A stretch of DNA of 64,000 bases from Diplonema japonicum (taxonomy: Eukaryota; Protista; Euglenozoa: Diplonemea): positions 434,001 through 498,000 of the forward strand of contig OZ025697.1 of assembly GCA_964019335.1 (NCBI GenBank), given 5' to 3'. Each line of letters starts with the position of its first letter. Position 1 is the first letter of the stretch. The notes below the pieces were generated by a model. It saw only the letters and a list, made by a program, of their open reading frames with translations. It searched no databases and was not told the origin of the DNA. A program made the position numbers and the translations under genes. Shown here piece by piece: positions 2,402 through 16,229 of this stretch.

Positions 2402-5400
2402 CTAGATTTTTGCGAATGTCCTTCCGCCGAAGAATTGTGACGAAGAAGATCTCTTTGCTGGTGGGAGGGACAAGGTGCGCTTTGGGAAGTGCGCCGAGTG
2501 GGCCAGCGTGCTAACGTTCAAAGGTGAAATGTACGATGACTTTGACCCCACAGAGCTCATCGTGGCTGCTTCCTCTACTTCTATTGTCTTCAGCTCCCTT
2601 TCAAGCTCAGGAGGTGACCAGAAGCTATTCTGAAGCCTGACCCTCCTTCCCGTGAACAGAACATAGCCATCTGACGCCAGATCAAGAACACCCTTCATCA
2701 GGAGTACGTACAATGAAGCTGAAAACAGTTCTTTTGAAAGCTTGAACCCGTTGTGGTCCAAGTCTTCATTGAAGAACCCCACCGCTTGGCAAGTAACGGC
2801 GATCCCCGTGATGCCATTGAAAACAAGATAGAACACACCGTCCTTATTCTTGGCGTAAGGCTTTCTCACCAGCTCGCCAGCAAGAAGAAAGAAGAATACC
2901 AACCCCAGCAACAGCTTCACCACACCGCACTCCTTCATCGTCTCTGTCTCCGGCACATTCAGTGCTCCCACAACAAACAAGCTCGCGAAGCTGAACACGC
3001 AGTACCATGCCGTCTCCTCTCTAAAGGGCTTGACCACGCTTGTGTACCTGTTGTACCACAAGTCTTCCTTCTGTACAGAGATCCACTCCCCTTTCCCCAG
3101 CATGAATATCTTTGGGATGCTGTCCTCCGTCACCTCGTCATGCATATATGCTGCCTTGCTAGGGACAGACCTCTTGATCTCACGCCCCGTGTAAACAGGT
3201 ACCGCAACGACCAGCAACGTGATGGCGACGCCCGCCACGCATTGTAGGGGGTTGCCAGGGTACACCACTAGGTGCAGCGCTGCGAAGGAGGTGCCTTGGT
3301 ACAGCATCAAAAAGAAGAACAGAGCGACAGAAGGGAACCGTGTCAAGCCCTGCGCCGCAAGCAGCGTTCCAAAGGGAAGCAACTGTGGGGTGAAGCGTGC
3401 CAGAAACAGCACCACAAGGTAGGTTATGAGGGTAACCCCTGCGGTGATGCAGAGGTTCCCGAGGATTACCCCGAAGTAGATGTTCCCCGACACACGCCAC
3501 CCGGTGGGGTGGAGCACGAAGGGCAAGTTCTCTGTCTTCCGGCAGTCCGACGCAGACACCAGCGCTAGCATGCCCCCGCTGGCCACAGCCGCGTTTAGAG
3601 GCATCACAGCCATAGCCGCCATGTTCACTCCTTCGTCCACTTGTGCGAGCTGTGCCCCCAACACCGTCAGCGTGCAATTCGTAGTTGCAGCCGCCCCCAG
3701 CCCCTTCGCTGTCGCTGTGATTGTAACTGTCTCGTCCGCAACACCACCATACGCACCATGCCCCATCCACACATCTGTCGCGTTCAGCCCCGCTTGCCCT
3801 TCCCCACTTGTCACGAAGAAGTCCTTCTGCTGCACTGCCCAATGGAACCCCCGCTCCACACGCGAGGATGTCTCCACCTGGATCTCCACCTCGGGGCGCC
3901 GCCCCCCACTCACGAGAAAGCACGTCACCCGCAGCCGCTTGGCTCGAACAATAGTCCACTCCACCTTCCCAGGGCACTCCATCTCCAGCACTGGCACAAC
4001 CGGGGCAGCCGTCGCCGGGGGCACTGTCTTCGGGAACGGTGTCGAGGGCCCCACCGTGGGGACACCTGTCGGAGCAGCGGTAGTAGCAGGCGACAGAGTC
4101 GCAGGTGCTGAGGTATCTGGAGCAACCGTCGGTGCTTTGGTGGCAGGCACTGATGTGTCTGGAGAGTTGGTGGGAAGAGCCGTTGGACCAGCAGTGCTAC
4201 CAGGTGCTAAAGTAGCAGGTGCGAGGGTTGCAGGAGGATGAGTTGGAGAAGTGGTTGCAGGTGCGGCCGTAGCAGGAGTGTCGGTAGGAACAGATGTTGG
4301 AACGGCAGTTTTTCCTGGTGTCAAGGTGGCCGGGACTAGGGTGCTGGGTGCAACAGTCGGGGGCACCTGTGTTTCAGGAGCCTGGGTACTGGGCGATAGA
4401 GTGGCAGGAGAAGGTGTGCTGGGGGTCATTGTAGGAACAGCAGTCGGGGCGGAAGCCGACGGCGCAAATGTAACAGGTGCTTGGGTCGCGGGTTGCACTG
4501 TGTCGGGGGCTAGGGTATCTGGTGAGGGGGTAGCAGGAGCGGGTGTGTCTGGGGCATTGGTGGGAGCAGCTGTCGGAACAGCAGTCTTGCCTGGTGACAA
4601 AGTCGCTGGTGCTAAAGTATCAGGAGACGGAGTATCTGGTGAGGGGGTAGCAGGAGCAGGTGTGTCTGGGGCATTGGTGGGAACAGCTGTCGGAACAGCA
4701 GTCTTGCCTGGTGACAGAGTTGACGGAACCAAAGTATCAGGAGAAGAGGTAGCAGGAGAGGGGGTAGCAGGAGCGGGAGTATTTGGAGCATTGGTGGGAA
4801 CAGCTGTTGGGACAGCAGTCTTGCCTGGTGACAAAGTCGCTGGTGCTAAAGTATCAGGGGCTGGGGTTTGGGGTGATGAAGTGACAGGTGCCGGTGTGTC
4901 AGGAGATGGAGTATCTGGTGAGGGGGTAGCAGGAGCAGGTGTGTTGGGGGCGTTGGTGGGAACAGCTGTCGGAACGGCAGTCTTGCCTGGTGACAAAGTC
5001 GCTGGTGCTACGGTATCAGGAGACGGAGTATCTGGTGAGGGGGTAGCAGGAGCGGGTGTGTTTGGGGCATTGGTGGGCACAGCTGTTGGGACAGCAGTCT
5101 TGCCTGGTGACAAAGTCGCTGGTGCTAAAGTAGCAGGGGCTAGGGTTTGGGGTGATGGAGTGACAGGTGCCGGTGTGTCAGGAGATGGAGTATCAGGTGA
5201 GGAGGTAGCAGGAGCAGGTGTGTTGGGGGCGTTGGTGGGAACGGCTGTTGGAACAGCAGTCTTGCCGGGTGACAAGGTCAATGGTGCAGGGGTTACGGGT
5301 GCAGTTGTCGTGGGTGCTTGGGTGGCAGGTGCCAGCGTTTTAGGAACTGAGGTATCCGGAGAGGGGGTATCAGGTGAGGATGTGTCGGGGGCGTTAGTAG

Positions 5401-7414
5401 GAACAGCTGTTGGGACAGCAGTCTTGCCTGGTGACAAAGTCGCTGGTGCTAAGGTATCAGGGGCTGGGGTTTGGGGCGATGGGGTAGCAGGTGCCAGTGT
5501 GTCAGGCGACGGAGTATCTGGTGAGGGGGTAGCAGGAGCAGGTGTGTTGGGAGCGTCGGTAGGAGCAGCTGTCGGAACGGCAGTCTTGCCCGGTGATAAG
5601 GTCAGTGGTGCAGGGGTTACGGGTGCAGTAGTCGGAGGTGTTTGGGTGGCAGGTACTGATGTGTCAGGAGCTGCCGTAGGCTGTGCTGTTGGCACGACTG
5701 TACTTGGTGCAAGCGTGTTAGGAGCAGGTGTGGCTGGTGCCATAGTAGGGTTGGCAGTTGGAACCGCAGTGTCAGGTGAGGTTGTATCGGGGGCGGGCGT
5801 CAAGGGTGAGGATGTAACAGGTATAGTAGTACTTGGTGCAGTGGTATCAGGTGAAAGTGTGTTTGGTGCCGAGGTGTCCGGAGCGGGCGTGTCAGGCACA
5901 GGGGTATCAGGTGCTGAGGTGTCTGGAGCAGGGGTATCAGGTGAGGGTGTAACAGGTGAAGGTGTAATAGGTGCAGGTGTGTCCGGTGAGGGTGTCGCAG
6001 GCGATAGTGTGTCTGGAGCAGGGGTATCAGGTGAAGGCGAAATAGGTGCTGGGGTATCTGGAGAAGGCGTGTCAGGTGCAGGTGTGTCTGGTGCCGGGGT
6101 GTCTGGAGCGGTCGTAGGTGCAGGTGTAGCAGGTGCCGGGGTGTCCGGAGCAGTGGTGTCAGGTGCTGGGGTGTCTGGGGCGGTGGTATCAGGTGAAGGC
6201 GTGTCTGGAGCAGGGGTATCAGGTGCAGATGTGTCAGGTGCTGAGGTGTCTGGAGCGGTCGTAGGTGCAAGTGTATCAGGTGCCGGGGTATCCGGAGCAG
6301 TGGTGTCAGGTGCTGGGGTACTAGGTGCTGGGGTATCTGGAGCGGTGGTGTCAGGTGCTGGGGTGTCTGGGGCGGTAGTATCAGGTGCAGGTGTGTCAGG
6401 TGAGGGTGTATCTGGTGCTGGGGTATTAGGCGCTGGGGTATCTGGAGCAGCGGTATCAGGCACAGCTGTGTCAGGTGCTGGGGTGTCCGGAGCAGTGGTA
6501 TCAGGCGCAGATGTGTCAGGTGCTGAGGTGTCCGGAGTGGTCGTAGGTACTGCGGTATCAGGTGCTGGGGTGTCTGGAGCAGTGGTATCTGGAGCAGTGG
6601 TGTCAGGTGCTGGGGTGTCTGGGGCGGTGGTATCAGGTGATGGTGTGTCAGGTGAGGGTGTAGCAGGTGCTGCGGTATCAGGTGCTGGGGTATCTGGAGC
6701 GGTGGTATCAGGCGCGGGTGTGTCAGGTGCTGGGGTATCAGGTGCTGGGGTGTCAGGTGCTGGGGTATCAGGTGCTGGAGTGTCTGGAGCAGTGGTATCA
6801 GGCGCAGGTGTGTCAGGTGCCGGGGTGTCAGGCGCAGACGTAGGTACTGCAGTATCAGGAGAAGACGTAGGTACAGCAGAATCCGGAACGGGTGTAGGTA
6901 CCGCAGTCGTCTCCTGCAGGTCGTAGACAATTTCGAAAGTGAGGACACTCCACCGTATAGGGTCGCCGACGGTATTAGCATTGTTCTTTGTGGTAAGGAC
7001 AAGGTCTGTGGCAGAGTTGCAGGTGGTGGGAGAGTAAGATGCAGGGCAGAGCCCCGCGCAGGAGGTGCCTTGGCAAGCGTTGCTGTTGTCCTCACACAGG
7101 CAGGTGATTGGGTTGGGGTTGGGGGCGATAAATGCCTGGCCACTGGTGCAGGACTCGGTGGTGGGGCCGCAAAACTCGAGCGTCCACACCGCGTCAGATA
7201 TCTTATTACCGATGGGAAACCACATCCCAGTACTGTAGATATCCATTGTTACAGTTTTCACGGTGACAGAGATGAGCTGCACAGTGCCCTGAATGCTGCT
7301 TTTGATAGTGTTCGTGCACGTGGCATCTTTCTCTATATTTGTACAGGTTCCGGAATAGGTTATTTGAACCCCTTGCACACAGCAAGCACCAAGGAGAACA
7401 AGTAGCAGTCGCAT
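2402..7414 (-). CDS. Large surface membrane protein: signal peptide, Cys-rich N-domain, Thr/Pro mucin-like stalk, multi-TM C-terminal domain (1670 aa)
   Basis: Intact ORF. Hydrophobic N-terminus MRLLLVLLGACCVQG, (D/A)TPAP repeats, and a C-terminal LPF.LHPTGW.V.GN..FG motif followed by about 8-9 hydrophobic segments. Paralog of 10099-12585. Confidence 0.9.
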   Translation of the reverse strand: MRLLLVLLGACCVQGVQITYSGTCTNIEKDATCTNTIKSSIQGTVQLISVTVKTVTMDIYSTGMWFPIGNKISDAVWTLEFCGPTTESCTSGQAFIAPNPNPITCLCEDNSNACQGTSCAGLCPASYSPTTCNSATDLVLTTKNNANTVGDPIRWSVLTFEIVYDLQETTAVPTPVPDSAVPTSSPDTAVPTSAPDTPAPDTPAPDTTAPDTPAPDTPAPDTPAPDTPAPDTPAPDTTAPDTPAPDTAAPATPSPDTPSPDTTAPDTPAPDTTAPDTTAPDTPAPDTAVPTTTPDTSAPDTSAPDTTAPDTPAPDTAVPDTAAPDTPAPNTPAPDTPSPDTPAPDTTAPDTPAPDTTAPDTPAPSTPAPDTTAPDTPAPDTLAPTTAPDTSAPDTSAPDTPAPDTPSPDTTAPDTPAPDTTAPDTPAPATPAPTTAPDTPAPDTPAPDTPSPDTPAPISPSPDTPAPDTLSPATPSPDTPAPITPSPVTPSPDTPAPDTSAPDTPVPDTPAPDTSAPNTLSPDTTAPSTTIPVTSSPLTPAPDTTSPDTAVPTANPTMAPATPAPNTLAPSTVVPTAQPTAAPDTSVPATQTPPTTAPVTPAPLTLSPGKTAVPTAAPTDAPNTPAPATPSPDTPSPDTLAPATPSPQTPAPDTLAPATLSPGKTAVPTAVPTNAPDTSSPDTPSPDTSVPKTLAPATQAPTTTAPVTPAPLTLSPGKTAVPTAVPTNAPNTPAPATSSPDTPSPDTPAPVTPSPQTLAPATLAPATLSPGKTAVPTAVPTNAPNTPAPATPSPDTPSPDTVAPATLSPGKTAVPTAVPTNAPNTPAPATPSPDTPSPDTPAPVTSSPQTPAPDTLAPATLSPGKTAVPTAVPTNAPNTPAPATPSPATSSPDTLVPSTLSPGKTAVPTAVPTNAPDTPAPATPSPDTPSPDTLAPATLSPGKTAVPTAAPTNAPDTPAPATPSPDTLAPDTVQPATQAPVTFAPSASAPTAVPTMTPSTPSPATLSPSTQAPETQVPPTVAPSTLVPATLTPGKTAVPTSVPTDTPATAAPATTSPTHPPATLAPATLAPGSTAGPTALPTNSPDTSVPATKAPTVAPDTSAPATLSPATTAAPTGVPTVGPSTPFPKTVPPATAAPVVPVLEMECPGKVEWTIVRAKRLRVTCFLVSGGRRPEVEIQVETSSRVERGFHWAVQQKDFFVTSGEGQAGLNATDVWMGHGAYGGVADETVTITATAKGLGAAATTNCTLTVLGAQLAQVDEGVNMAAMAVMPLNAAVASGGMLALVSASDCRKTENLPFVLHPTGWRVSGNIYFGVILGNLCITAGVTLITYLVVLFLARFTPQLLPFGTLLAAQGLTRFPSVALFFFLMLYQGTSFAALHLVVYPGNPLQCVAGVAITLLVVAVPVYTGREIKRSVPSKAAYMHDEVTEDSIPKIFMLGKGEWISVQKEDLWYNRYTSVVKPFREETAWYCVFSFASLFVVGALNVPETETMKECGVVKLLLGLVFFFLLAGELVRKPYAKNKDGVFYLVFNGITGIAVTCQAVGFFNEDLDHNGFKLSKELFSASLYVLLMKGVLDLASDGYVLFTGRRVRLQNSFWSPPELERELKTIEVEEAATMSSVGSKSSYISPLNVSTLAHSAHFPKRTLSLPPAKRSSSSQFFGGRTFAKI
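4290..6905 (-). repeat. Coding tandem repeats: 15-nt DTPAP units plus 9 higher-order units containing TLSPGKTAVPT
   Basis: Visible directly in the DNA and protein. Confidence 0.95.
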
Positions 7415-7683
7415 CAGTCCTCTATTCTTTTTTTTTTTTTTTTCTTTTCTTTTTTTTTTCTTTTTTTGTTTCCCGGACTTTCTCTAGTTGCTCATTTTAT
7501 TTGCGCTTTCTTTTTGTGTTTCACCTGTTGTAGTTTTATTTAGGCTTTCTCAGGGGTAAAAGAAGTGGGCGGGGGGAGAGAAAGAAAGTTATCGTTCGCT
7601 AATTAGCGGGTTAAAGAAAAACTCAAATTAACATGCAAACCCCTAAAGCGCGAAGGCTGCATGCCCTAAAAAGGGAGGGGGTA

Positions 7684-7810
7684 TGGTCAGTACTAGGTAG
7701 CTCTCAGTTTCGATCTAATCTTGCGACTCCTCCAAGTGCTGATCTCTTCAGGCAAGTAGCACCCTTCATTGGCTCCCACTAGCGAGTATGGAGAGTACTA
7801 TTCCCGACCA
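7684..7810 (-). ncRNA. Putative type III hammerhead ribozyme (slightly degenerate), within a repeat spanning 7626-7810
   Basis: CUGAAGA (7751-7745), stem II GAUC/GAUC, GAAA (7711-7708), UC cleavage site (7785-7784), stem I GCUAGUGG/CUACUUGC, and a long stem III with an AGUA/GAA loop-E motif closed by UGGUCGG/CUGACCA. Confidence 0.65.
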
Positions 7811-8912
7811 AGAAAAATGAAAAAATAATAATAATGGAAAAAAAAAAAAAAAATACTGTGGCATCCGTTCACTTGTTCTCGGTGGTTCAAATTCTTTTTT
7901 GGTTTACAGTATTCTTCCACGATATGTTTGTTTTCTTCTTCTTCTTCTTCTTCTTCTTCTTCTTTTTTTTTTCTCGTTTCTTAATTCTTTCATTCTTGCG
8001 TGAAGGACCCTTTTAGAAATAAAGAAATTCGGTAGATTTTCAGGGGTGCGGGGGGGGGGTGTAAAAAGATTTAAGCTCTAGACTTCCCCCCCCCCCCCCC
8101 CCCGTGAATTGTTTCTTTTCTTCTTCTGCCCTGGTACGACAAAAGTTGGCGTTCGTTCTTTTTTTTTTTTGAGATATTTTTTCGGAATTTCTTCAGTTTC
8201 AGTAACAAAAAAAAAAAGAGGGGAAGGGGGCGACAGCCCTTCAAGAAAGAGCAAGGGATAAAAAACATAAGCTACCTTCCTTGACACCGAAGACACTATA
8301 CTCCAGCATTTTTTTTTTCTTTTTCCCCTTCTAGCTTTTGAAGTTTCACATTCAAACAGATTTATTTCTTTTTTTTTTAAACCCCTTCTTCAAAGTGGTG
8401 GGGGCTTAAAAGAACATACTTACTTACAAAAAAAAACACGAATTTTTTCAAAATACATGGCCGAAACTATTGGTTTAAAAAGGGAATATTTGTGGGATTG
8501 AATCCTGTTCAGTTTTTTTTGGGGGGGGGAAGGAAAAGTAGATTAAGAAAAGGGACACAAGGTGCTGCAACACGTGACACTGTGTCCGCGTGTAAAAAAA
8601 TTTCTTTTTCCCGTTTCTTTCCCGTTTTTTAAACTTTCTTTTTCTTTTTTTTTACTTATACCGATAAGATGGGACGAGGAAGGAGAAAAAAAGGGGGGGG
8701 TGGCGCAAAAAAAAGGCCAACGCCTTTGATTCCCGCCTCATCTCCGGTTTTTTTCTTCTTCTTCTTCTTCTCTTTTTTTTTTTTAAAATTCTTTTTTATT
8801 TCTTTCGTTCGTTTTTCTTTCTTGCTTCCCCTTTCGAAACACACGTAAAGGGAGGGAAAAAAAAATGAGCAAAAACAAGAAACCACTACAAAACACAGCA
8901 ATCCAATCAAGG

Positions 8913-8946
<34 letters not shown>

Positions 8947-8951
8947 AAAAA

Positions 8952-9670
8952 AAACTCGATAAAATTTCAGTGTGCATGGGGGTGCTCACTGTTCAGGTAG
9001 AAATTCACACTAATCGGTCACCGTTCTGCGGTTGCTGTCTGGTGCCTGCGGTGGCTGTTTGTCGCGATGAGATGGACGGCATCTGGGCGAGAAACATTGC
9101 TTGGAGTCGTGCTAGGTAGGGGGGGGTTTGGCTCGAGGAGAAGAGTGGTCTCCTGTCGTAGCCGTGTGCCGTCGGGCCCCCAAGATGTCGAAGGGTATGC
9201 ACCCTTGATTTGGCGTTGGCGGGGAAGGCTGACCTTCCACAGCGTGCTGAGCATTTCTGGATGCGACCCAAGATGTATCGCATCCTTGCGGCCTTCTCCG
9301 TGAGCAGGTCTTGATCGTCGAGGGGACCTATGAGTGACCGGCGGGTGGTCTGCTCATAGTCTATGGCGAGTTCCATTGTCGTGACGGAAGTTTTCTTCTT
9401 ACCATCGTACCATCGTAGGCCTCTTAGCCACTTGAGGACGTTCTTCAAATGAAAGGTCAGGACAGCGCCTGACGCCCCGTTCGCCTTCAGCAACGCTTCC
9501 GTCGGAACATCATGTTGCCTCCCTGTCGTTACCTCATCCCAAGGGTTGGAGGTGAGCACTCTCTTGCTTTTTTCCGCTGCTTTGGCGTCACGGACCGTCA
9601 CTACTTTCAGGAGGTATTGTTGCACCATCCTGGCACGTTCTTTCCCTGCTTTGTCGGCTCCTCTTGGGAC
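8952..9670 (-). mobile_element. Fragment of a probable non-LTR retrotransposon ORF C-terminus and 3' flank
   Basis: Open frame with WLRGLRW, ELAIDYE, TLRHLGG and GYDRRP motifs, reminiscent of C-terminal regions of protist LINE-like ORFs. No proper start. A degenerate second copy lies at 18821-19185 on the opposite strand. Confidence 0.55.
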
Positions 9671-9961
9671 TAAAAAAAAAAACAACACAAAAAAAAAAGG
9701 AAAAGAAAAGGGGGCCGTTGGCTATATGTGTCGGGTAGAAGAGAAACCTAGAGAAGTTTAATAGCCCACAAACACATTACCAACTTTCCCCCCTTTTGTT
9801 AAGACAAGCCAACAGACTCGTTCTTGCAAAGAGAGGTGGGGGAGATCCCCCCACCGGAGGTGGGGGGAGAGGAGAGGAGGGACGAGAGGGTAATATCTAT
9901 TTTCAAAAAAATGGCCAAAACGCCAACGACGGGCGTTGGCTAGAAAAAAAAAAAAAACTTT

Positions 9962-10083
9962 AATTAACACGCAAACTCCCTGAGACGAAAGCAGCATGCC
10001 CTAAAAAAGGGAGGGGGTATGGTCAGTACTAGGTAGCTCTCAGTTTCGGTCAAATCTCGCGATTCCTCCAGATGCCGACCTCA
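9962..10083 (-). repeat. Second, 5'-truncated copy of the hammerhead-containing repeat
   Basis: A 40-nt block at 10009-10048 is identical to 7673-7712. Stem II reads GGUC/GACC versus GAUC/GAUC in copy 1. Truncated inside the CUGANGA box by a poly-U tract. Confidence 0.85.
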
Positions 10084-12728: not shown

Positions 12729-15700
12729 TCACGTAAGTGACGAGATGCCTTTGTTGCGCATTTTCCTCTTTTTTCTGTTCTGCTGCACCCGTTGGATGAG
12801 CTCCTCGCTGGAGGCACCTATCGGTGTGGCTGTATCGCCCCACACTACATACCCATCGATGGAGGAGAAGCCTGCAAAGTTCATCTTGGTGCTGATGGTC
12901 TTCCCGTTCGTTGCTTTTTTCCGCTTCTTGTCCAACGTGCTCGCCAGCCTGTCCATCAACTCCCTCTTCCCGTCATCATGTTGCACGGGGCACACATCAG
13001 TGTCTTCCTTCCAATTCTTCAGCAGCGGGCTCTTCAAAAACCTATCTGTCACGCTGACCGTCTGGTGCATCGTCCACGGCTTCTCTAATTTCTCTCTCTC
13101 CACAACCGCCGGTGGCACTTTCTTCACAGGTACTTCTTGCTTCTCCTCTTCTTCTACCACAGGTGGTTGTTCGGGTTCTGTTTTATTCAGGACCCCCGCA
13201 AGGTTCGACACAGAAGGTTTTTTTAGATTCTTCTGTGATGCTCCTGTGGAGAACAGTGAGAATGTTGGCTTCTTTCTTCTGCTGCTTGCAAGCAACACGT
13301 GCGGTTGCATCTCTGACGATGCTGTGAAGTCGCCGGACATGTTGTCAGCGCTGGACAGGAGGCCCAGCTCAAACGTGCTGATCCCAACTGAGGGGTGTTC
13401 GTTGAAGTTGAAGTCAACACCTGCCTCTGTTGCGCCTGTGTTCTCAGGTGAGGTCATGCGTTCTGGTTGGATTTCGATGGCCGGACACGGTGACTGATCA
13501 TCGTCATCGACAGCCAAGTTAGCGCAAGCAGCTTCCTTGTTAGCCCTGTCAAGGAGCGATTGCAAAGCGGTCTGCTTGTTCTCTTCCTCGTCGCACCCCC
13601 ACAGCAATGCGTTGACTACTTTCTTCACCTTTAGGGCATCGGTTTTGATGTCTTGCCCTACAAGGTGGCCTGTATTCCTCCACTTGTCCATCAGCTTCAC
13701 TGGGCTTGTCAACTCATCCTGTGTGGCACGGTGTATGTCTTCATCGCCACACGCATCTTCCAACAGTGTGTCTGCTTCCTTGTCTGCTATCGTTTCATCG
13801 TTTTCGGTTGTGAGCAGTGTTATGGATTCCGGTTCATAGAGGTTCGACCGCCTTCGAGTCTCCTGCTTTTTGGCCGTTCTTGCCTTCTTGATGGCCTCCT
13901 CAGCAGCGGTTGCTCCGGTGATGTTGAAGCAATTCGAAACCGTCTTCGCCTTCACGTTTTTTGCAGATTTTGAGGACACCACGTTGGGAACCTTTGCCCG
14001 CATCTCCGTTTCGATCTTGTCGATGACTTCGAGCGCTTTGGGGTTCGACTGGTGCTGGATCCTGCCTTCCTTGCAGTACCACCATAACTCGTGTCTCTTC
14101 TGAATAGAATACCTTATGAGCATGGTACGGATGGAAGGCGTGACGGCCACAAGGCTGGCGTTGATGAGGCTGGACAGCTCATGTATGCTGATGATGAGTT
14201 CTAACGTGTTGCTGGAGTGGGTGTAACTATTGACCTTTTCCACAGCATGCGTCAGCTGTGCTATCGTCTCATTGTGTGCAGCATCCTTCACTTTCCGCAG
14301 CCGTGTGAGCACCCTCTCCGTCTCCGAGGTGATGAGAATGAGAGACTTTTGCATCTCCTGCTGCTCGTTGTTCACAGAAACGTCCACCTGACGCCACATT
14401 TGCTCCATCTCTTCTAACACTTTCTGTGACCTTTCACCAGCAGCTTTTCCTTTTTGTCCCCATACACCAACGCCTCCATCGTGCCTTGTGCTCTGCCACG
14501 ACACGCTGCTCCTGTTCCTTGGTATCTTGTTCGCCACCGCCTTTCTGTTTAACAGCGGTCTGGAATGGTACTTCACATCACGTTTCCTTTGCGTTGGGGC
14601 TGCTTGCTCTCTCTTCTCCGAAAGCAGTGGTGCGGGTGACATGGCGTCCAGCTGCTGTGCTTTGCTCGCATTGTGAAGCGTGGCATGCGCCGTTACGACC
14701 GATAGCTTTGACATGTGGCTGTACTGATTCTCGACAGGCACCCAGCACCGCGATGGGTCTGTGGGCATGTCCAGTGCCACAGAGTACGACGTGACCGGCC
14801 GTCCCGACAGTGGTGCAGTGGAGGGCCGCACGGTCGCGGCAGGCTTGCTGTCGGTCTTAGATGAAGCGGTGCTTTGGTTGTGTTGGTCGTCCAGGGCTGC
14901 CAGCAGCTTGTTGACGTCTTTCAACTCTTCGCGGTTCTCTGTGTCCCCCTCCGTGTCTCTCCTTGTCTCCGCCCCCTTCCCTGCTTGGTTACCTTGTTGC
15001 AGCAGCTTTTTCGTGAGCTGTGGAACAATCAAATTGTTCCAAACGGGACAATGTTCTGGCATCTCGGGCTCCGTTAGCTCTGCCGCACGCTCGACCTTGA
15101 GTTGTGCATGAGCTGCATGGCTGCCAATGACAGACTCAGCCACCCCAGGGGGGGGTGCCGTGCCATCTGCCTGGCGCAGTCCATGCTGCACCTGCGACTC
15201 GCTGTCAAGAACGGAGTCTGCGATGTACGAGTTGCGTGCGGCACTAGAGCCGTCCAGGTAGTAGCTCACAAGGGGGGACATGGCCTGCAGGGGGAACCGC
15301 CCGCAAGGGTGCCGCCCCATCCACCTTTTCCATGACTGATTGGCTTCGTCCGGCTCGTGTTTCACAGTAGGCTGCGCGCCATCCTCGTTATGGAAGAGCC
15401 GTTTGTCCTTTCCCTTCATCGAGACCACAGGTGACGAGGCACGCCCGTACTGCAGCTTGTGGCCCGCACCCTCGCCTTTGATGAAGTACAGGTCCTCTTC
15501 TATGGAGCGCAGCGTTTTGTGGTCGCTGTCCCTCCTTGTCTTTGGGATCCCGACATCGCAGAGGCCGGAGTGCTTGACTTTCTCCGCGTGCTGCTGTGTG
15601 GAGCTGCTGTATGTGAGGAGCAGCCATTTCTTTTGGGTTTCCTGCCGCTTGCTTACGAAAGGGCGTTTGGTTGTGGTGGGGGTGGTTTTGCTCTTGGGGA

Positions 15701-16229
15701 TGCTGGCGGTCCTGGTTTCGGGGGGTTTCCCTGAGTTGGAGGGGAGGAGGCCGGTGATCCAGAAGGTGACATTGAGAAGAAGCGAAGAGAGAAATGTGGA
15801 GGGGAGGTTCTTATCGTCAGGAAACGTGTGCTCGAAGCAGAGGTAGAGGGTCTTTGCAAGGAGGCAGGCATAGTCTTGCAGGGCCGTGTCCTTGCCCAGA
15901 CCTTCGAAGAGGGGGACGTAAGAGGAGGCCATCTTGCTGAAGAGTGCTTCCGTGTACGCCGTGTCGCTCACCTGCTTGAAATGCACGGCCATCACGTACC
16001 AGTACATCGCACCGAGAAGGGCTTCTGTGTAGCTGGATGAAAGCAACCTACGAACCACCACTGGCACAGCCTCTCCAAGCATCGCTTTCTGAACAAACAT
16101 TGCCACACCACCATCAAACACCTCCAAGTTCCTGCCCTCAGTTACCTTTGGTAATACTATGCTTTTTATTGGACCCTTTGCACCCTCTCCTATCCCCTTT
16201 ATCTGTTCTCTTAATTTGTTCCAAAACAT
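12729..16229 (-). CDS. FAM227/FWWh-domain-like protein with long low-complexity and coiled-coil C-terminus (1166 aa)
   Basis: Intact ORF. The N-terminal pattern [10 protein letters not shown]...[13 protein letters not shown]...[11 protein letters not shown]...FWITG resembles the FWWh domain. Confidence 0.65.

What the first reader, a model, noticed from the sequence alone, without database searches (positions are those of the whole stretch)
7626..7810. Hammerhead-ribozyme-like structured RNA repeat on the transcribed strand
Seen: the minus strand 7810->7684 reads UGGUCGG GAA UA GUA CUCUC CAUAC UC^GCUAGUGG GAGCCAAUGAAGGGUG CUACUUGC CUGAAGA GAUC AGCACUUGGAGG AGUC GCAA GAUU A GAUC GAAA CUGAGAG C UAC CU AGUA CUGACCA. 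This has the hammerhead core (CUGANGA, GAAA, UH) in type III order, with predicted cleavage between 7784 and 7783. It also has an 8-bp stem I with one U.U mismatch and a GNRA-capped hairpin within stem II. A loop I-loop II pairing (GGGUG/CACUU) is possible, and the long stem III contains an AGUA/GAA loop-E motif. The second copy (9962-10083) keeps the structure: stem II GGUC/GACC (double compensatory change), AAUC-GCGA-GAUU (GNRA kept), CAUCU still able to pair GGGUG, and a covarying downstream hairpin. Established: hammerheads occur in retrozymes, Penelope-like elements and viroid-like RNAs. Inference: this is a ribozyme-bearing mobile or circRNA-forming family in a euglenozoan, and in a polycistronic unit cleavage could also affect pre-mRNA processing. 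Caveat: this copy has a C.C mismatch next to the core (CUC rather than GUC) and may be inactive.
Basis: partly seen in the sequence, partly recalled or inferred. Interest (0 to 1): 0.88.

Follow-up and report, generated by a model that had tools for sequence, protein, structure and literature searches.

The report
Rewired hammerhead core inside a SINE

Summary
The sequence is as quoted. It is one short-form copy (7810-7622, minus strand) of a tail-less SINE. At least 150 copies carry the core, and they sit in T-rich tracts, mostly in the sense of the flanking genes.

- Its "UC^G" site and free stem I strand exist only because this copy, and one sibling, lost 8 nt; this copy also has a C>T change.
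- The A15.1-U16.1 pair is kept in 2 of 39 copies.
- In intact copies the stem I strand is locked in a different hairpin.
- The second copy (10082-9958) is 5'-truncated and has no CUGANGA.

A different wiring fits almost every intact copy: YCUYGC-CUGAWGA-GRWC-12 nt-AGU-H^GCRAGA-UWW-GWYC-GAAA-CU. The substrate strand lies inside the stem II loop, and the predicted cut is at 7725/7724. About 92-95% of pair cells are paired. Compensatory changes occur in stems I and II, and the only subfamily-level core variation is at N7 and H17.

Rfam finds nothing, which is expected for this strand order. No usable RNA data exist, so cutting is untested. Other agents of this scan reached the same rewired reading on other copies (s1-869276). 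I took that as a lead and re-tested it here.

The parts
7622..7810 (-). Short-form SINE copy (subfamily A). It starts at UGGUCGGG and ends at ...GUUAAUUUGAG, and carries an 8-nt internal deletion.
   Evidence: Family boundaries come from 30-100 aligned copies.
7811..7817 (-). Upstream copy of the putative target-site duplication, TTTTTCT. The downstream copy is at 7615-7621.
   Evidence: The 7-nt match directly flanks the element. Clearer duplications occur in other copies, for example 22 nt in L017.
7615..7621 (-). Downstream copy of the putative target-site duplication, TTTTTCT.
7784..7785 (-). Junction of the copy-specific 8-nt deletion (TGCTGGGA missing). U at 7785 is a further C>T change.
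   Evidence: Only L001 (the window) and L002a lack these columns. A contig from intact copies diverges exactly here, reading ACCTGCTGGGA.
7752..7757 (-). Strand 2.6-2.1 of stem I in the rewired hammerhead (ACUUGC; 5 bp in this copy, 6 bp in most).
7745..7751 (-). Hammerhead core C3-A9 (CUGAAGA).
7741..7744 (-). Stem II strand 10.1-10.4 (GAUC).
7726..7728 (-). Stem III strand 16.3-16.1 (AGU).
7724..7725 (-). Predicted cleavage site in the rewired model: C17 (7725) ^ G1.1 (7724).
   Evidence: GUH is kept in 72 of 79 distinct copies. This is an inference; cutting has not been shown.
7719..7724 (-). Stem I strand 1.1-1.6 (GCAAGA).
   Evidence: Pair 2.3/1.3 is U-A in 19 and C-G in 36 distinct copies.
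7712..7715 (-). Stem II strand 11.4-11.1 (GAUC).
7706..7711 (-). G12 A13 A14 A15.1, followed by C15.2 U15.3 (stem III).
7759..7764 (-). Helix X 5' strand, GGGUGC.
   Evidence: 97-100% paired, with G.U>G-C one-sided changes.
7734..7739 (-). Helix X 3' strand, GCACUU.
7791..7810 (-). 5' strand of the long closing helix (UGGUCGG...GUAC-UCUC). It pairs with 7705-7684.
   Evidence: 94-96% paired, with one-sided changes only.
7684..7705 (-). 3' strand of the closing helix (GAGAG...CUGACCA). It continues stem III.
7632..7664 (-). 3'-terminal hairpin (GCAUGC...GCAUG). Together with the UUAAUUUGAG end it is the only part kept in the many ~42-nt copies.
9958..10082 (-). Second copy, subfamily B. It is 5'-truncated at GAGGUC, so it lacks CUGANGA and strand 2.x and has no hammerhead in any wiring.

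Best explanation
Window 7810-7622 (minus strand) is a short-form copy of a non-coding, tail-less retroposon (SINE) of about 190-197 nt. A 259-nt long form also exists. The host genome is diplonemid-type, probably Diplonema japonicum or a close relative. Copies insert into T-rich tracts with target-site duplications, are often 5'-truncated, and nearly always lie in the sense of neighbouring genes, so they are co-transcribed with them.

The body of the element carries a complete hammerhead core. The three strands follow each other in the order A-C-B instead of the natural A-B-C:
[stem I 2.x YCUYGC]-CUGAWGA-[stem II GRWC]-AGCACYUGGAGG-[stem III AGU]-H17^[stem I 1.x GCRAGA]-UWW-[stem II GWYC]-GAA-[stem III ACU]-GAGAG...
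Stem III runs on into the long closing helix formed with the 5' end of the element. A further helix (GGGUGC/GCACYU) ties together the distal ends of stems I and II.

Shown: the pairings, their covariation, and the conservation of the core. Inferred: that this fold cuts after GUC (7725^7724). It could do so in cis as a pseudoknot. It could equally do so in trans or as a domain-swapped dimer between copies, which needs no new topology. Also inferred: that uncut or religated RNA is the template for retroposition.

For: Family and mobility:
- Copy numbers.
- The 3' end is fixed, and 5' ends peak at three places.
- Target-site duplications reach 22 nt.
- In 53 of 60 loci the longest flanking open frame is on the element's strand.

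Type III wiring rejected:
- A15.1-U16.1 is kept in 2 of 39 copies and stem I is 75% paired.
- Its 5' strand forms hairpin H1 in intact copies, 97% paired.
- The deletion is present only in the window copy and L002a.

Rewired wiring:
- 95.3% of cells are paired on 39 copies and 92.5% on 79 distinct copies. Slid controls give 26-52%.
- Compensatory pairs: 2.3/1.3 is C-G in 36 and U-A in 19 copies; 10.2/11.2 is G-C in 52 and A-U in 14; 10.3/11.3 is U-A in 36 and A-U in 23.
- All four combinations of the stem I and stem II states occur. That means extra compensatory events or recombination.
- The core positions are intact in most copies, with scattered single-copy losses. The only variants shared by many copies are at N7 (A 48, U 26) and H17 (C 65, U 7).
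- The canonical G10.1-C11.1 and C15.2-G16.2 pairs are present.
- A descriptor for this wiring hits only this copy in the window and nothing in 60 dinucleotide shuffles. My analytic estimate is about 0.2 chance hits per genome.
- 40 of 95 copies keep the whole motif.
Against: - No cleavage data exist. The public runs are contigs only and show no RNA ends.
- The A-C-B strand order is unreported for natural hammerheads (my own knowledge; two searches found none), and I could not model it in 3D.
- Stem III is only 3 bp before a junction.
- The compensatory changes may trace to few independent events. A tree built from the other columns gives only 1-2 contrasts on supported branches.
- Nested MFE folds are no more stable than shuffles (z = -0.2, -0.8 and +0.1), and they prefer an alternative hairpin that buries part of CUGAWGA.
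- 5'-truncated copies do not pile up at the predicted 3' cleavage product (reference position 159).
- Rfam hammerhead models do not match, although they cannot represent this strand order.
Confidence: 0.6

Rival explanations
1. The element is a structured SINE whose pseudoknotted body serves something other than catalysis, such as recognition by the reverse transcriptase, RNA stability or packaging. On this view the hammerhead core is a coincidence, or a dead relic of an ancestral ribozyme.
For: - The helices are real, but nothing shows cutting.
- There is no excess of copies starting at the predicted cleavage product.
- An internal cut would destroy the retroposition template.
- A competing nested fold exists: GGGUGC/GCACYU plus CUY/GAG.
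- The 12-nt 'linker' is as conserved as the core, which points to constraints beyond a hammerhead.
- Independent covariation events are few.
Against: - Given two helices in exactly these positions, the junction strands reading CUGANGA, GAAA and UH by chance is about 2e-7 (my estimate).
- Variants shared by many copies fall exactly on the two degenerate core positions.
- The canonical 10.1-11.1 and 15.2-16.2 pairs are present.
- The 2.3/1.3 correlation is not explained by the nested alternative.
Confidence: 0.3
2. One reading: a type III hammerhead that cleaves at 7784/7783, with stem I GCUAGUGG/CUACUUGC and the long 5'/3' helix as stem III.
For: In this one copy the boxes are in type III order, stem I has 7 of 8 pairs, and the MFE fold of this copy draws it.
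Against: - U16.1 arises from an 8-nt deletion plus a C>T change and is found in 2 of 39 copies.
- Stem I is mismatched at 3 positions in most copies.
- Its 5' strand forms hairpin H1 in intact copies.
- Even here 15.2/16.2 is C.C, and five bases separate CUCUC from the site.
- Rfam's type III model is silent at E<=10.
Confidence: 0.03
3. The conserved boxes are internal RNA polymerase III promoter elements of a tRNA-like SINE head: GCUAGUGG as the A box and GWYCGAAAC as the B box.
For: There is a loose resemblance to the TRGCNNAGTGG and GGTTCGANNCC consensus boxes (my own knowledge), spaced about 60 nt apart.
Against: - ARAGORN finds no tRNA-like fold, and Rfam finds no tRNA, 5S or 7SL match.
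- The 'TT' of the B box is exactly what varies here, and it varies together with a distant partner.
- The A box would lie about 36 nt from the 5' end.
Confidence: 0.05

Closest known systems
Hammerhead ribozyme (types I, II and III; Rfam RF00163, RF00008, RF02276)
   Same: All invariant core bases are present: CUGANGA, GAA, the A15.1-U16.1 pair and H17. Three helices abut the core with no spare bases. G10.1-C11.1 and C15.2-G16.2 are present, and the triplet is GUC or GUU.
   Different: The strand order is A-C-B, with the substrate strand inside the stem II loop. This is not a circular permutation of the natural order. Stem III is 3 bp and runs on into a junction. No Rfam model matches. Activity is untested.
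Hammerheads of Penelope-like elements, retrozymes and satellite or SINE-like repeats (Schistosoma Sm-alpha, newt satellite 2), some of which act as dimers
   Same: A hammerhead core carried by a short non-autonomous repeat. Stem III is short, and action in trans or as a dimer is possible.
   Different: Those are ordinary type I or III motifs in tandem or LTR-like repeats and give circular or monomeric RNAs. Here the copies are solitary, dispersed and tail-less, each with one internal motif. No circles are shown. The one PLE-like family I looked at has an unrelated 3' end.
Ribozyme-headed retroposons (HDV-like ribozymes of R2, RTE and L1Tc/NARTc), and the HDV-headed ~320-nt SINE that other agents reported in this same genome
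   Same: A self-cleaving motif inside a retroposon that rides in host transcripts, with insertion into T-rich tracts of the same genome.
   Different: There the ribozyme sits at the exact 5' end and frees the element. Here the predicted cut is internal, at about nt 86 of 190, so it cannot trim the element out.
Stringent-type SINEs with a 3' stem-loop recognised by the partner LINE (for example UnaSINE1/UnaL2)
   Same: A fixed 3' hairpin plus a short tail, 5' truncations, and target-site duplications. The hairpin plus tail alone is enough to be copied (~42-nt copies).
   Different: No partner element with the same tail was found. The 5' ends are discrete rather than random. No tRNA, 5S or 7SL head is present.

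Membership tests
Hammerhead ribozyme | Invariant core C3 U4 G5 A6 N7 G8 A9 and G12 A13 A14 | tested here: met
   Present in the window copy. Among the 79 distinct copies, 67-73 keep each core base. N7 is A in 48 and U in 26.
Hammerhead ribozyme | Cleavage triplet N-U-H with an A15.1-U16.1 pair adjoining the core | tested here: met
Met only in the rewired wiring. U16.1 is present in 70 of 79 copies; H17 is C in 65, U in 7, A in 1 and G in 1; the A15.1-U16.1 pair is kept in 62 copies plus 3 wobble.
Hammerhead ribozyme | Three helices I, II and III abutting the core, supported by covariation | tested here: met
   In the rewired wiring 92.5-95.3% of cells are paired, with compensatory changes in stem I (one pair) and stem II (two pairs). 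Stem III shows no compensatory change. The number of independent events is small or uncertain.
Hammerhead ribozyme | Strand connectivity of type I, II or III (circular permutations of A-B-C) | tested here: not met
   The order along the sequence is 2.x-core-10.x / 16.x-17-1.x / 11.x-GAA-15.x, which is A-C-B. Type I and type III registers fail in intact copies (and by inspection).
Hammerhead ribozyme | Match to the curated Rfam hammerhead covariance models | tested here: not met
   No hit at the gathering score in the window, nor at E<=10 around the window copy and an intact copy. These models cannot represent the A-C-B order.
Hammerhead ribozyme | Site-specific self-cleavage giving 2',3'-cyclic phosphate and 5'-OH ends | not testable with these tools
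   Only assembled contigs of public runs were available.
SINE (non-autonomous non-LTR retroposon) | Short, non-coding, dispersed and multi-copy, with a fixed 3' end, 5' truncations and target-site duplications | tested here: met
SINE (non-autonomous non-LTR retroposon) | Head derived from tRNA, 7SL or 5S with an internal Pol III promoter | tested here: not met
   No tRNA was found and there is no Rfam match.
SINE (non-autonomous non-LTR retroposon) | 3' end shared with an autonomous partner element | tested here: inconclusive
   None of 40 tail-bearing loci continues into a longer element. The PLE-like family has a different end. The ~750-nt repeat in the window ends similarly (...AUCGAG before a T-run), but it is not shown to be autonomous.
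Retrozyme / viroid-like circular RNA | Two hammerheads in direct repeats flanking a unit that is excised and circularised | tested here: not met
   There is one motif per element and copies are solitary. The two window copies belong to different subfamilies, differ in truncation, have separate T-rich flanks, and enclose an unrelated repeat. No circular junctions could be sought.

The most novel reading that the evidence does not exclude
This SINE carries the first natural hammerhead with a non-circularly permuted (A-C-B) strand order. It would be catalytically active in cis as a compact pseudoknot, or between copies as a domain-swapped dimer. It would cut SINE-bearing polycistronic transcripts at GUC^G and so influence the fate of the element and of neighbouring mRNAs in a diplonemid.
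Probability: 0.5. Interest if true: 0.85.

Novelty: new variant of a known kind. Interest (0 to 1): 0.72.

Why it matters
Hammerheads are the best-studied small ribozymes, and every natural example falls into three circular permutations of one strand order. A family in which the substrate strand sits inside the stem II loop, backed by covariation in two stems, would matter in three ways. It would show that the fold tolerates, or that evolution found, the mirror order. It would explain why motif searches and Rfam models miss such ribozymes. It would add a ribozyme-bearing retroposon to diplonemids, an abundant marine group with almost no described mobile elements. There is also a practical warning: reads from intact copies break at 7785/7784 when mapped to this copy, which could be mistaken for a cleavage site.

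Tried and rejected
- Rfam at the gathering score and at E<=10, on the window copy and an intact long copy: no hammerhead, HDV, hatchet, twister, tRNA, 5S or 7SL match.
- Type I wiring, with stem III as ACUG/UAGU and a cut after GUA: stem I strands are not complementary (by inspection).
- HDV-like fold at the short-form or long-form 5' end: no convincing P1 or P1.1 by inspection, and no Rfam hit. Not pursued with a formal descriptor.
- A hammerhead using the 64-nt long-form extension as the stem I strand (GCAGGAGCCA/UGCUUCUUGC, 9 of 10 pairs): there is no UH before it, so I dropped it.
- tRNA-like head or RNase P/Z processing: ARAGORN was negative.
- Pol III A and B boxes: a weak match, and the 'B box' covaries as an RNA helix.
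- Partner element: a PLE-like family with an N-terminal GIY-YIG domain was found, but its 3' end is unrelated.
- Cross-species copies: a 22-base pattern found nothing in the metagenome contigs. I did not use the second scan.
- RNA evidence: only contigs, of uncertain RNA status. No ends, strands or levels can be read from them.
- Tree-based test for independent compensatory events: too little signal in short, young sequences.
- Target-site duplication statistics across all copies: blurred by T-runs (mean longest match 7.9 against 7.3 in the control). Only individual non-homopolymer cases are convincing.

Full report
WHAT IS THERE. It is not a two-copy repeat. A genome search with 7815-7620 returned 42 scored matches at 80-100% identity out of 165 candidates. 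A 33-nt core pattern gave 50 and 32 hits for two variants, with none for the reversed controls. The 16-nt tail TTGCATGTTAATTTGA occurs 152 times against 1 for the control.

Aligning copies with their flanks fixes the element. It starts at (G)UGGUCGGGAAAAGUAC and ends at ...GCAUGUUAAUUUGAR, with no A-tail. The T-run that follows is target sequence. Several copies show non-homopolymer target-site duplications directly abutting both ends, for example 22 nt in L017, 9 nt in L015 and TTTTTCT around the window copy.

5' ends cluster at three places:
- A long form with 64 extra bases (about 11 copies found).
- The short form starting at UGGUCGGG. The window copy is one of these.
- A very short form of about 42 nt, holding only the 3' hairpin and tail. 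This accounts for 14 of 38 copies in an unbiased tail-based sample.

In 53 of 60 loci the longest flanking open frame is on the element's strand. Two of the seven exceptions were strand mis-calls of mutated copies.

The host is a euglenozoan with tiny introns and A-rich intron 3' ends. This matches what PMC12621601 reports for Diplonema japonicum, the species an earlier scan note also named. I treat that identification as probable, not shown.

- Rfam finds no hammerhead, or any other family, on this stretch, either at the gathering score or at E<=10. The same is true of an intact long copy.
- The cause is visible in the alignment. Every other copy reads CCAWACC-UGCUGGGA-CGCUAGURGG. The window copy and its sibling L002a have lost UGCUGGGA, and the window copy alone has a C>U change that supplies 'U16.1'.
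- In intact copies CCUGCUGG pairs with CUAGURGG to form an 8-bp hairpin, 97% paired.
A contig from other copies breaks exactly there when laid on the window. An apparent RNA end at that place would be a mapping artefact.
- The second copy (10082-9958) belongs to another subfamily. It is 5'-truncated at GAGGUC after a T-run, and lacks CUGANGA, stem I and the 5' strand of stem III.

CUGAWGA and GAAA are kept. Stem II covaries: GAUC/GAUC, GGUC/GACC and GGAC/GUCC. GGGUGC/GCACYU pairs in nearly every copy. The long 5'/3' helix is 94-96% paired.

A DIFFERENT WIRING. While testing alternatives I noticed that the strand just 5' of C3 (YCUYGC) is complementary to GCRAGA inside the stem II loop, and that GCRAGA is preceded by GUC. 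A look-up then showed that other readers, and one follow-up agent of this scan (s1-869276), had proposed the same 'substrate strand in loop II' reading on other copies. I treated that as a lead and tested it myself.

Written out, the motif is 2.x-CUGAWGA-10.x-(12 nt)-16.3-16.1-H17^1.x-(3 nt)-11.x-GAA-15.x. That is strand order A-C-B rather than the natural A-B-C.

- On alignment A2, 95.3% of cells pair, and the A15.1-U16.1 pair is kept in 38 of 39 copies.
- On 79 distinct sequences aligned by a model that knew only stem II, 92.5% of cells pair, against 26-52% for slid controls.
- Three pairs show compensatory double changes: 2.3/1.3 is C-G in 36 and U-A in 19; 10.2/11.2 is G-C in 52 and A-U in 14; 10.3/11.3 is U-A in 36 and A-U in 23.
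- All four combinations of the stem I state and the 10.3/11.3 state occur, in subfamilies A, B, C and D. This requires at least one extra compensatory event, or recombination.
- The core positions are intact in most copies, with scattered single-copy losses. Variants shared by many copies occur only at N7 (A or U) and H17 (C, or U in subfamily D, giving GUU). These are the two positions a hammerhead leaves free.
- G10.1-C11.1 and C15.2-G16.2, the usual closing pairs, are present.
- A descriptor for this wiring finds exactly one hit in the 64-kb window, which is this copy, and none in 60 dinucleotide shuffles. My analytic estimate is about 0.2 chance hits per genome. Given the two helices, the junctions reading as the full core by chance is of order 1e-7.
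- 40 of 95 copies, including the window copy, keep the whole motif.

GEOMETRY (inference only). Stem III (3 bp) continues on its 15.x strand into GAGAG, which pairs with CUCUC of the 5' end, so it can stack on the long closing helix. Helix X (GGGUGC/GCACYU) joins strand 2.x and strand 10.x through one base each, and UWW joins 1.6 to 11.4. The distal ends of stems I and II therefore meet in a three-way junction, at the place where natural hammerheads make their loop-loop contact. The same pairs could also form between two molecules, as a trans or domain-swapped dimer. That would need no new topology and would resemble the dimeric hammerheads of Penelope-like elements (my own knowledge).

CAVEATS.
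- Nothing shows cutting. The only public runs are assembled contigs of uncertain RNA status.
- Nested MFE folds are no better than shuffles.
- A tree built from the remaining columns is too weak to count independent events, giving 1-2 contrasts on supported branches.
- Truncated copies do not pile up at the predicted 3' product.
- An internal cut does not obviously help a retroposon.
- My literature searches found no report of such a strand order, but the library is partial.

VERDICT. This is a SINE copy. The type III drawing and its cleavage site are artefacts of a private deletion. A hammerhead core in an unreported strand order is the best-supported reading of the family (about 0.6). A non-catalytic structured domain is the main rival (about 0.3).

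Noticed in passing
window 8912-9672 (minus strand): A second, unrelated repeat of about 750 nt that is very young: 98-99% identity and at least 633 first-look candidates. It starts at GUCCCAAGAGG after a T-run and ends ...AAAUUUUAUCGAG before a T-run. The GAG-before-T-tract ending resembles the SINE's end. It holds a 227-aa open frame (9005-9688) with no Pfam match. Public runs show very high contig depth here.
   Followed up: partly
L010:1437-1500 (and L009, L011, L016, L018, L021, L024, L026, L075; diverged in L057): A long form of the SINE carries 64 extra 5' bases (CGCGCAGGAGCC...GCGGAGACCG). Its first 12 bases are complementary (9 of 10 pairs) to GGGUGCUUCUUGC just upstream of CUGAAGA, so they could mask stem I. 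The origin of the two discrete 5' ends is unexplained.
   Followed up: partly
L061-L100 (for example L064, L068, L077, L098): The commonest class in a tail-based sample is a ~42-nt mini-copy, consisting of the 3' hairpin GCAUGC...GCAUG plus UUAAUUUGAG, inserted in T-runs. Both this 5' end and the short-form 5' end coincide with the 5' base of a stable helix.
   Followed up: partly
G000:C52:199000-208400 (L127, L131) and C106:62690-72000 (L128, L132): A Penelope-like candidate: about 10 copies with a GIY-YIG domain near the start of an open frame of up to 2175 aa. Two copies are 99.3% identical over 4.6 kb and end at ...AAAACCAUUUCAGU, which is unrelated to the SINE tail.
   Followed up: partly
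window 2402-7414 (minus strand): A 1670-aa open frame built largely of 15-nt (5-residue) periodic repeats, with strong GC skew and no Pfam match. The SINE lies about 200 nt upstream of its start codon.
   Followed up: no
window 7683-7784: Contigs from runs guessed to be RNA cover the SINE body at depth 37-98, while the unique flanks are at 0-4. This is compatible with SINE RNA being present, but repeats collapse in contigs and the runs may be DNA.
   Followed up: no
L002:1508-1967, L013:1025-1697, L067 (3' flank): Some copies sit head to tail, 17-290 nt apart. This is expected if new copies land in the T-rich duplications left by older ones. It is not evidence for tandem, retrozyme-like units.
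   Followed up: no
window 12729-16229 (minus strand): A 1166-aa open frame with an FWWh domain (PF14922, E = 1.9e-15). It is an ordinary neighbouring gene on the same strand.
   Followed up: no
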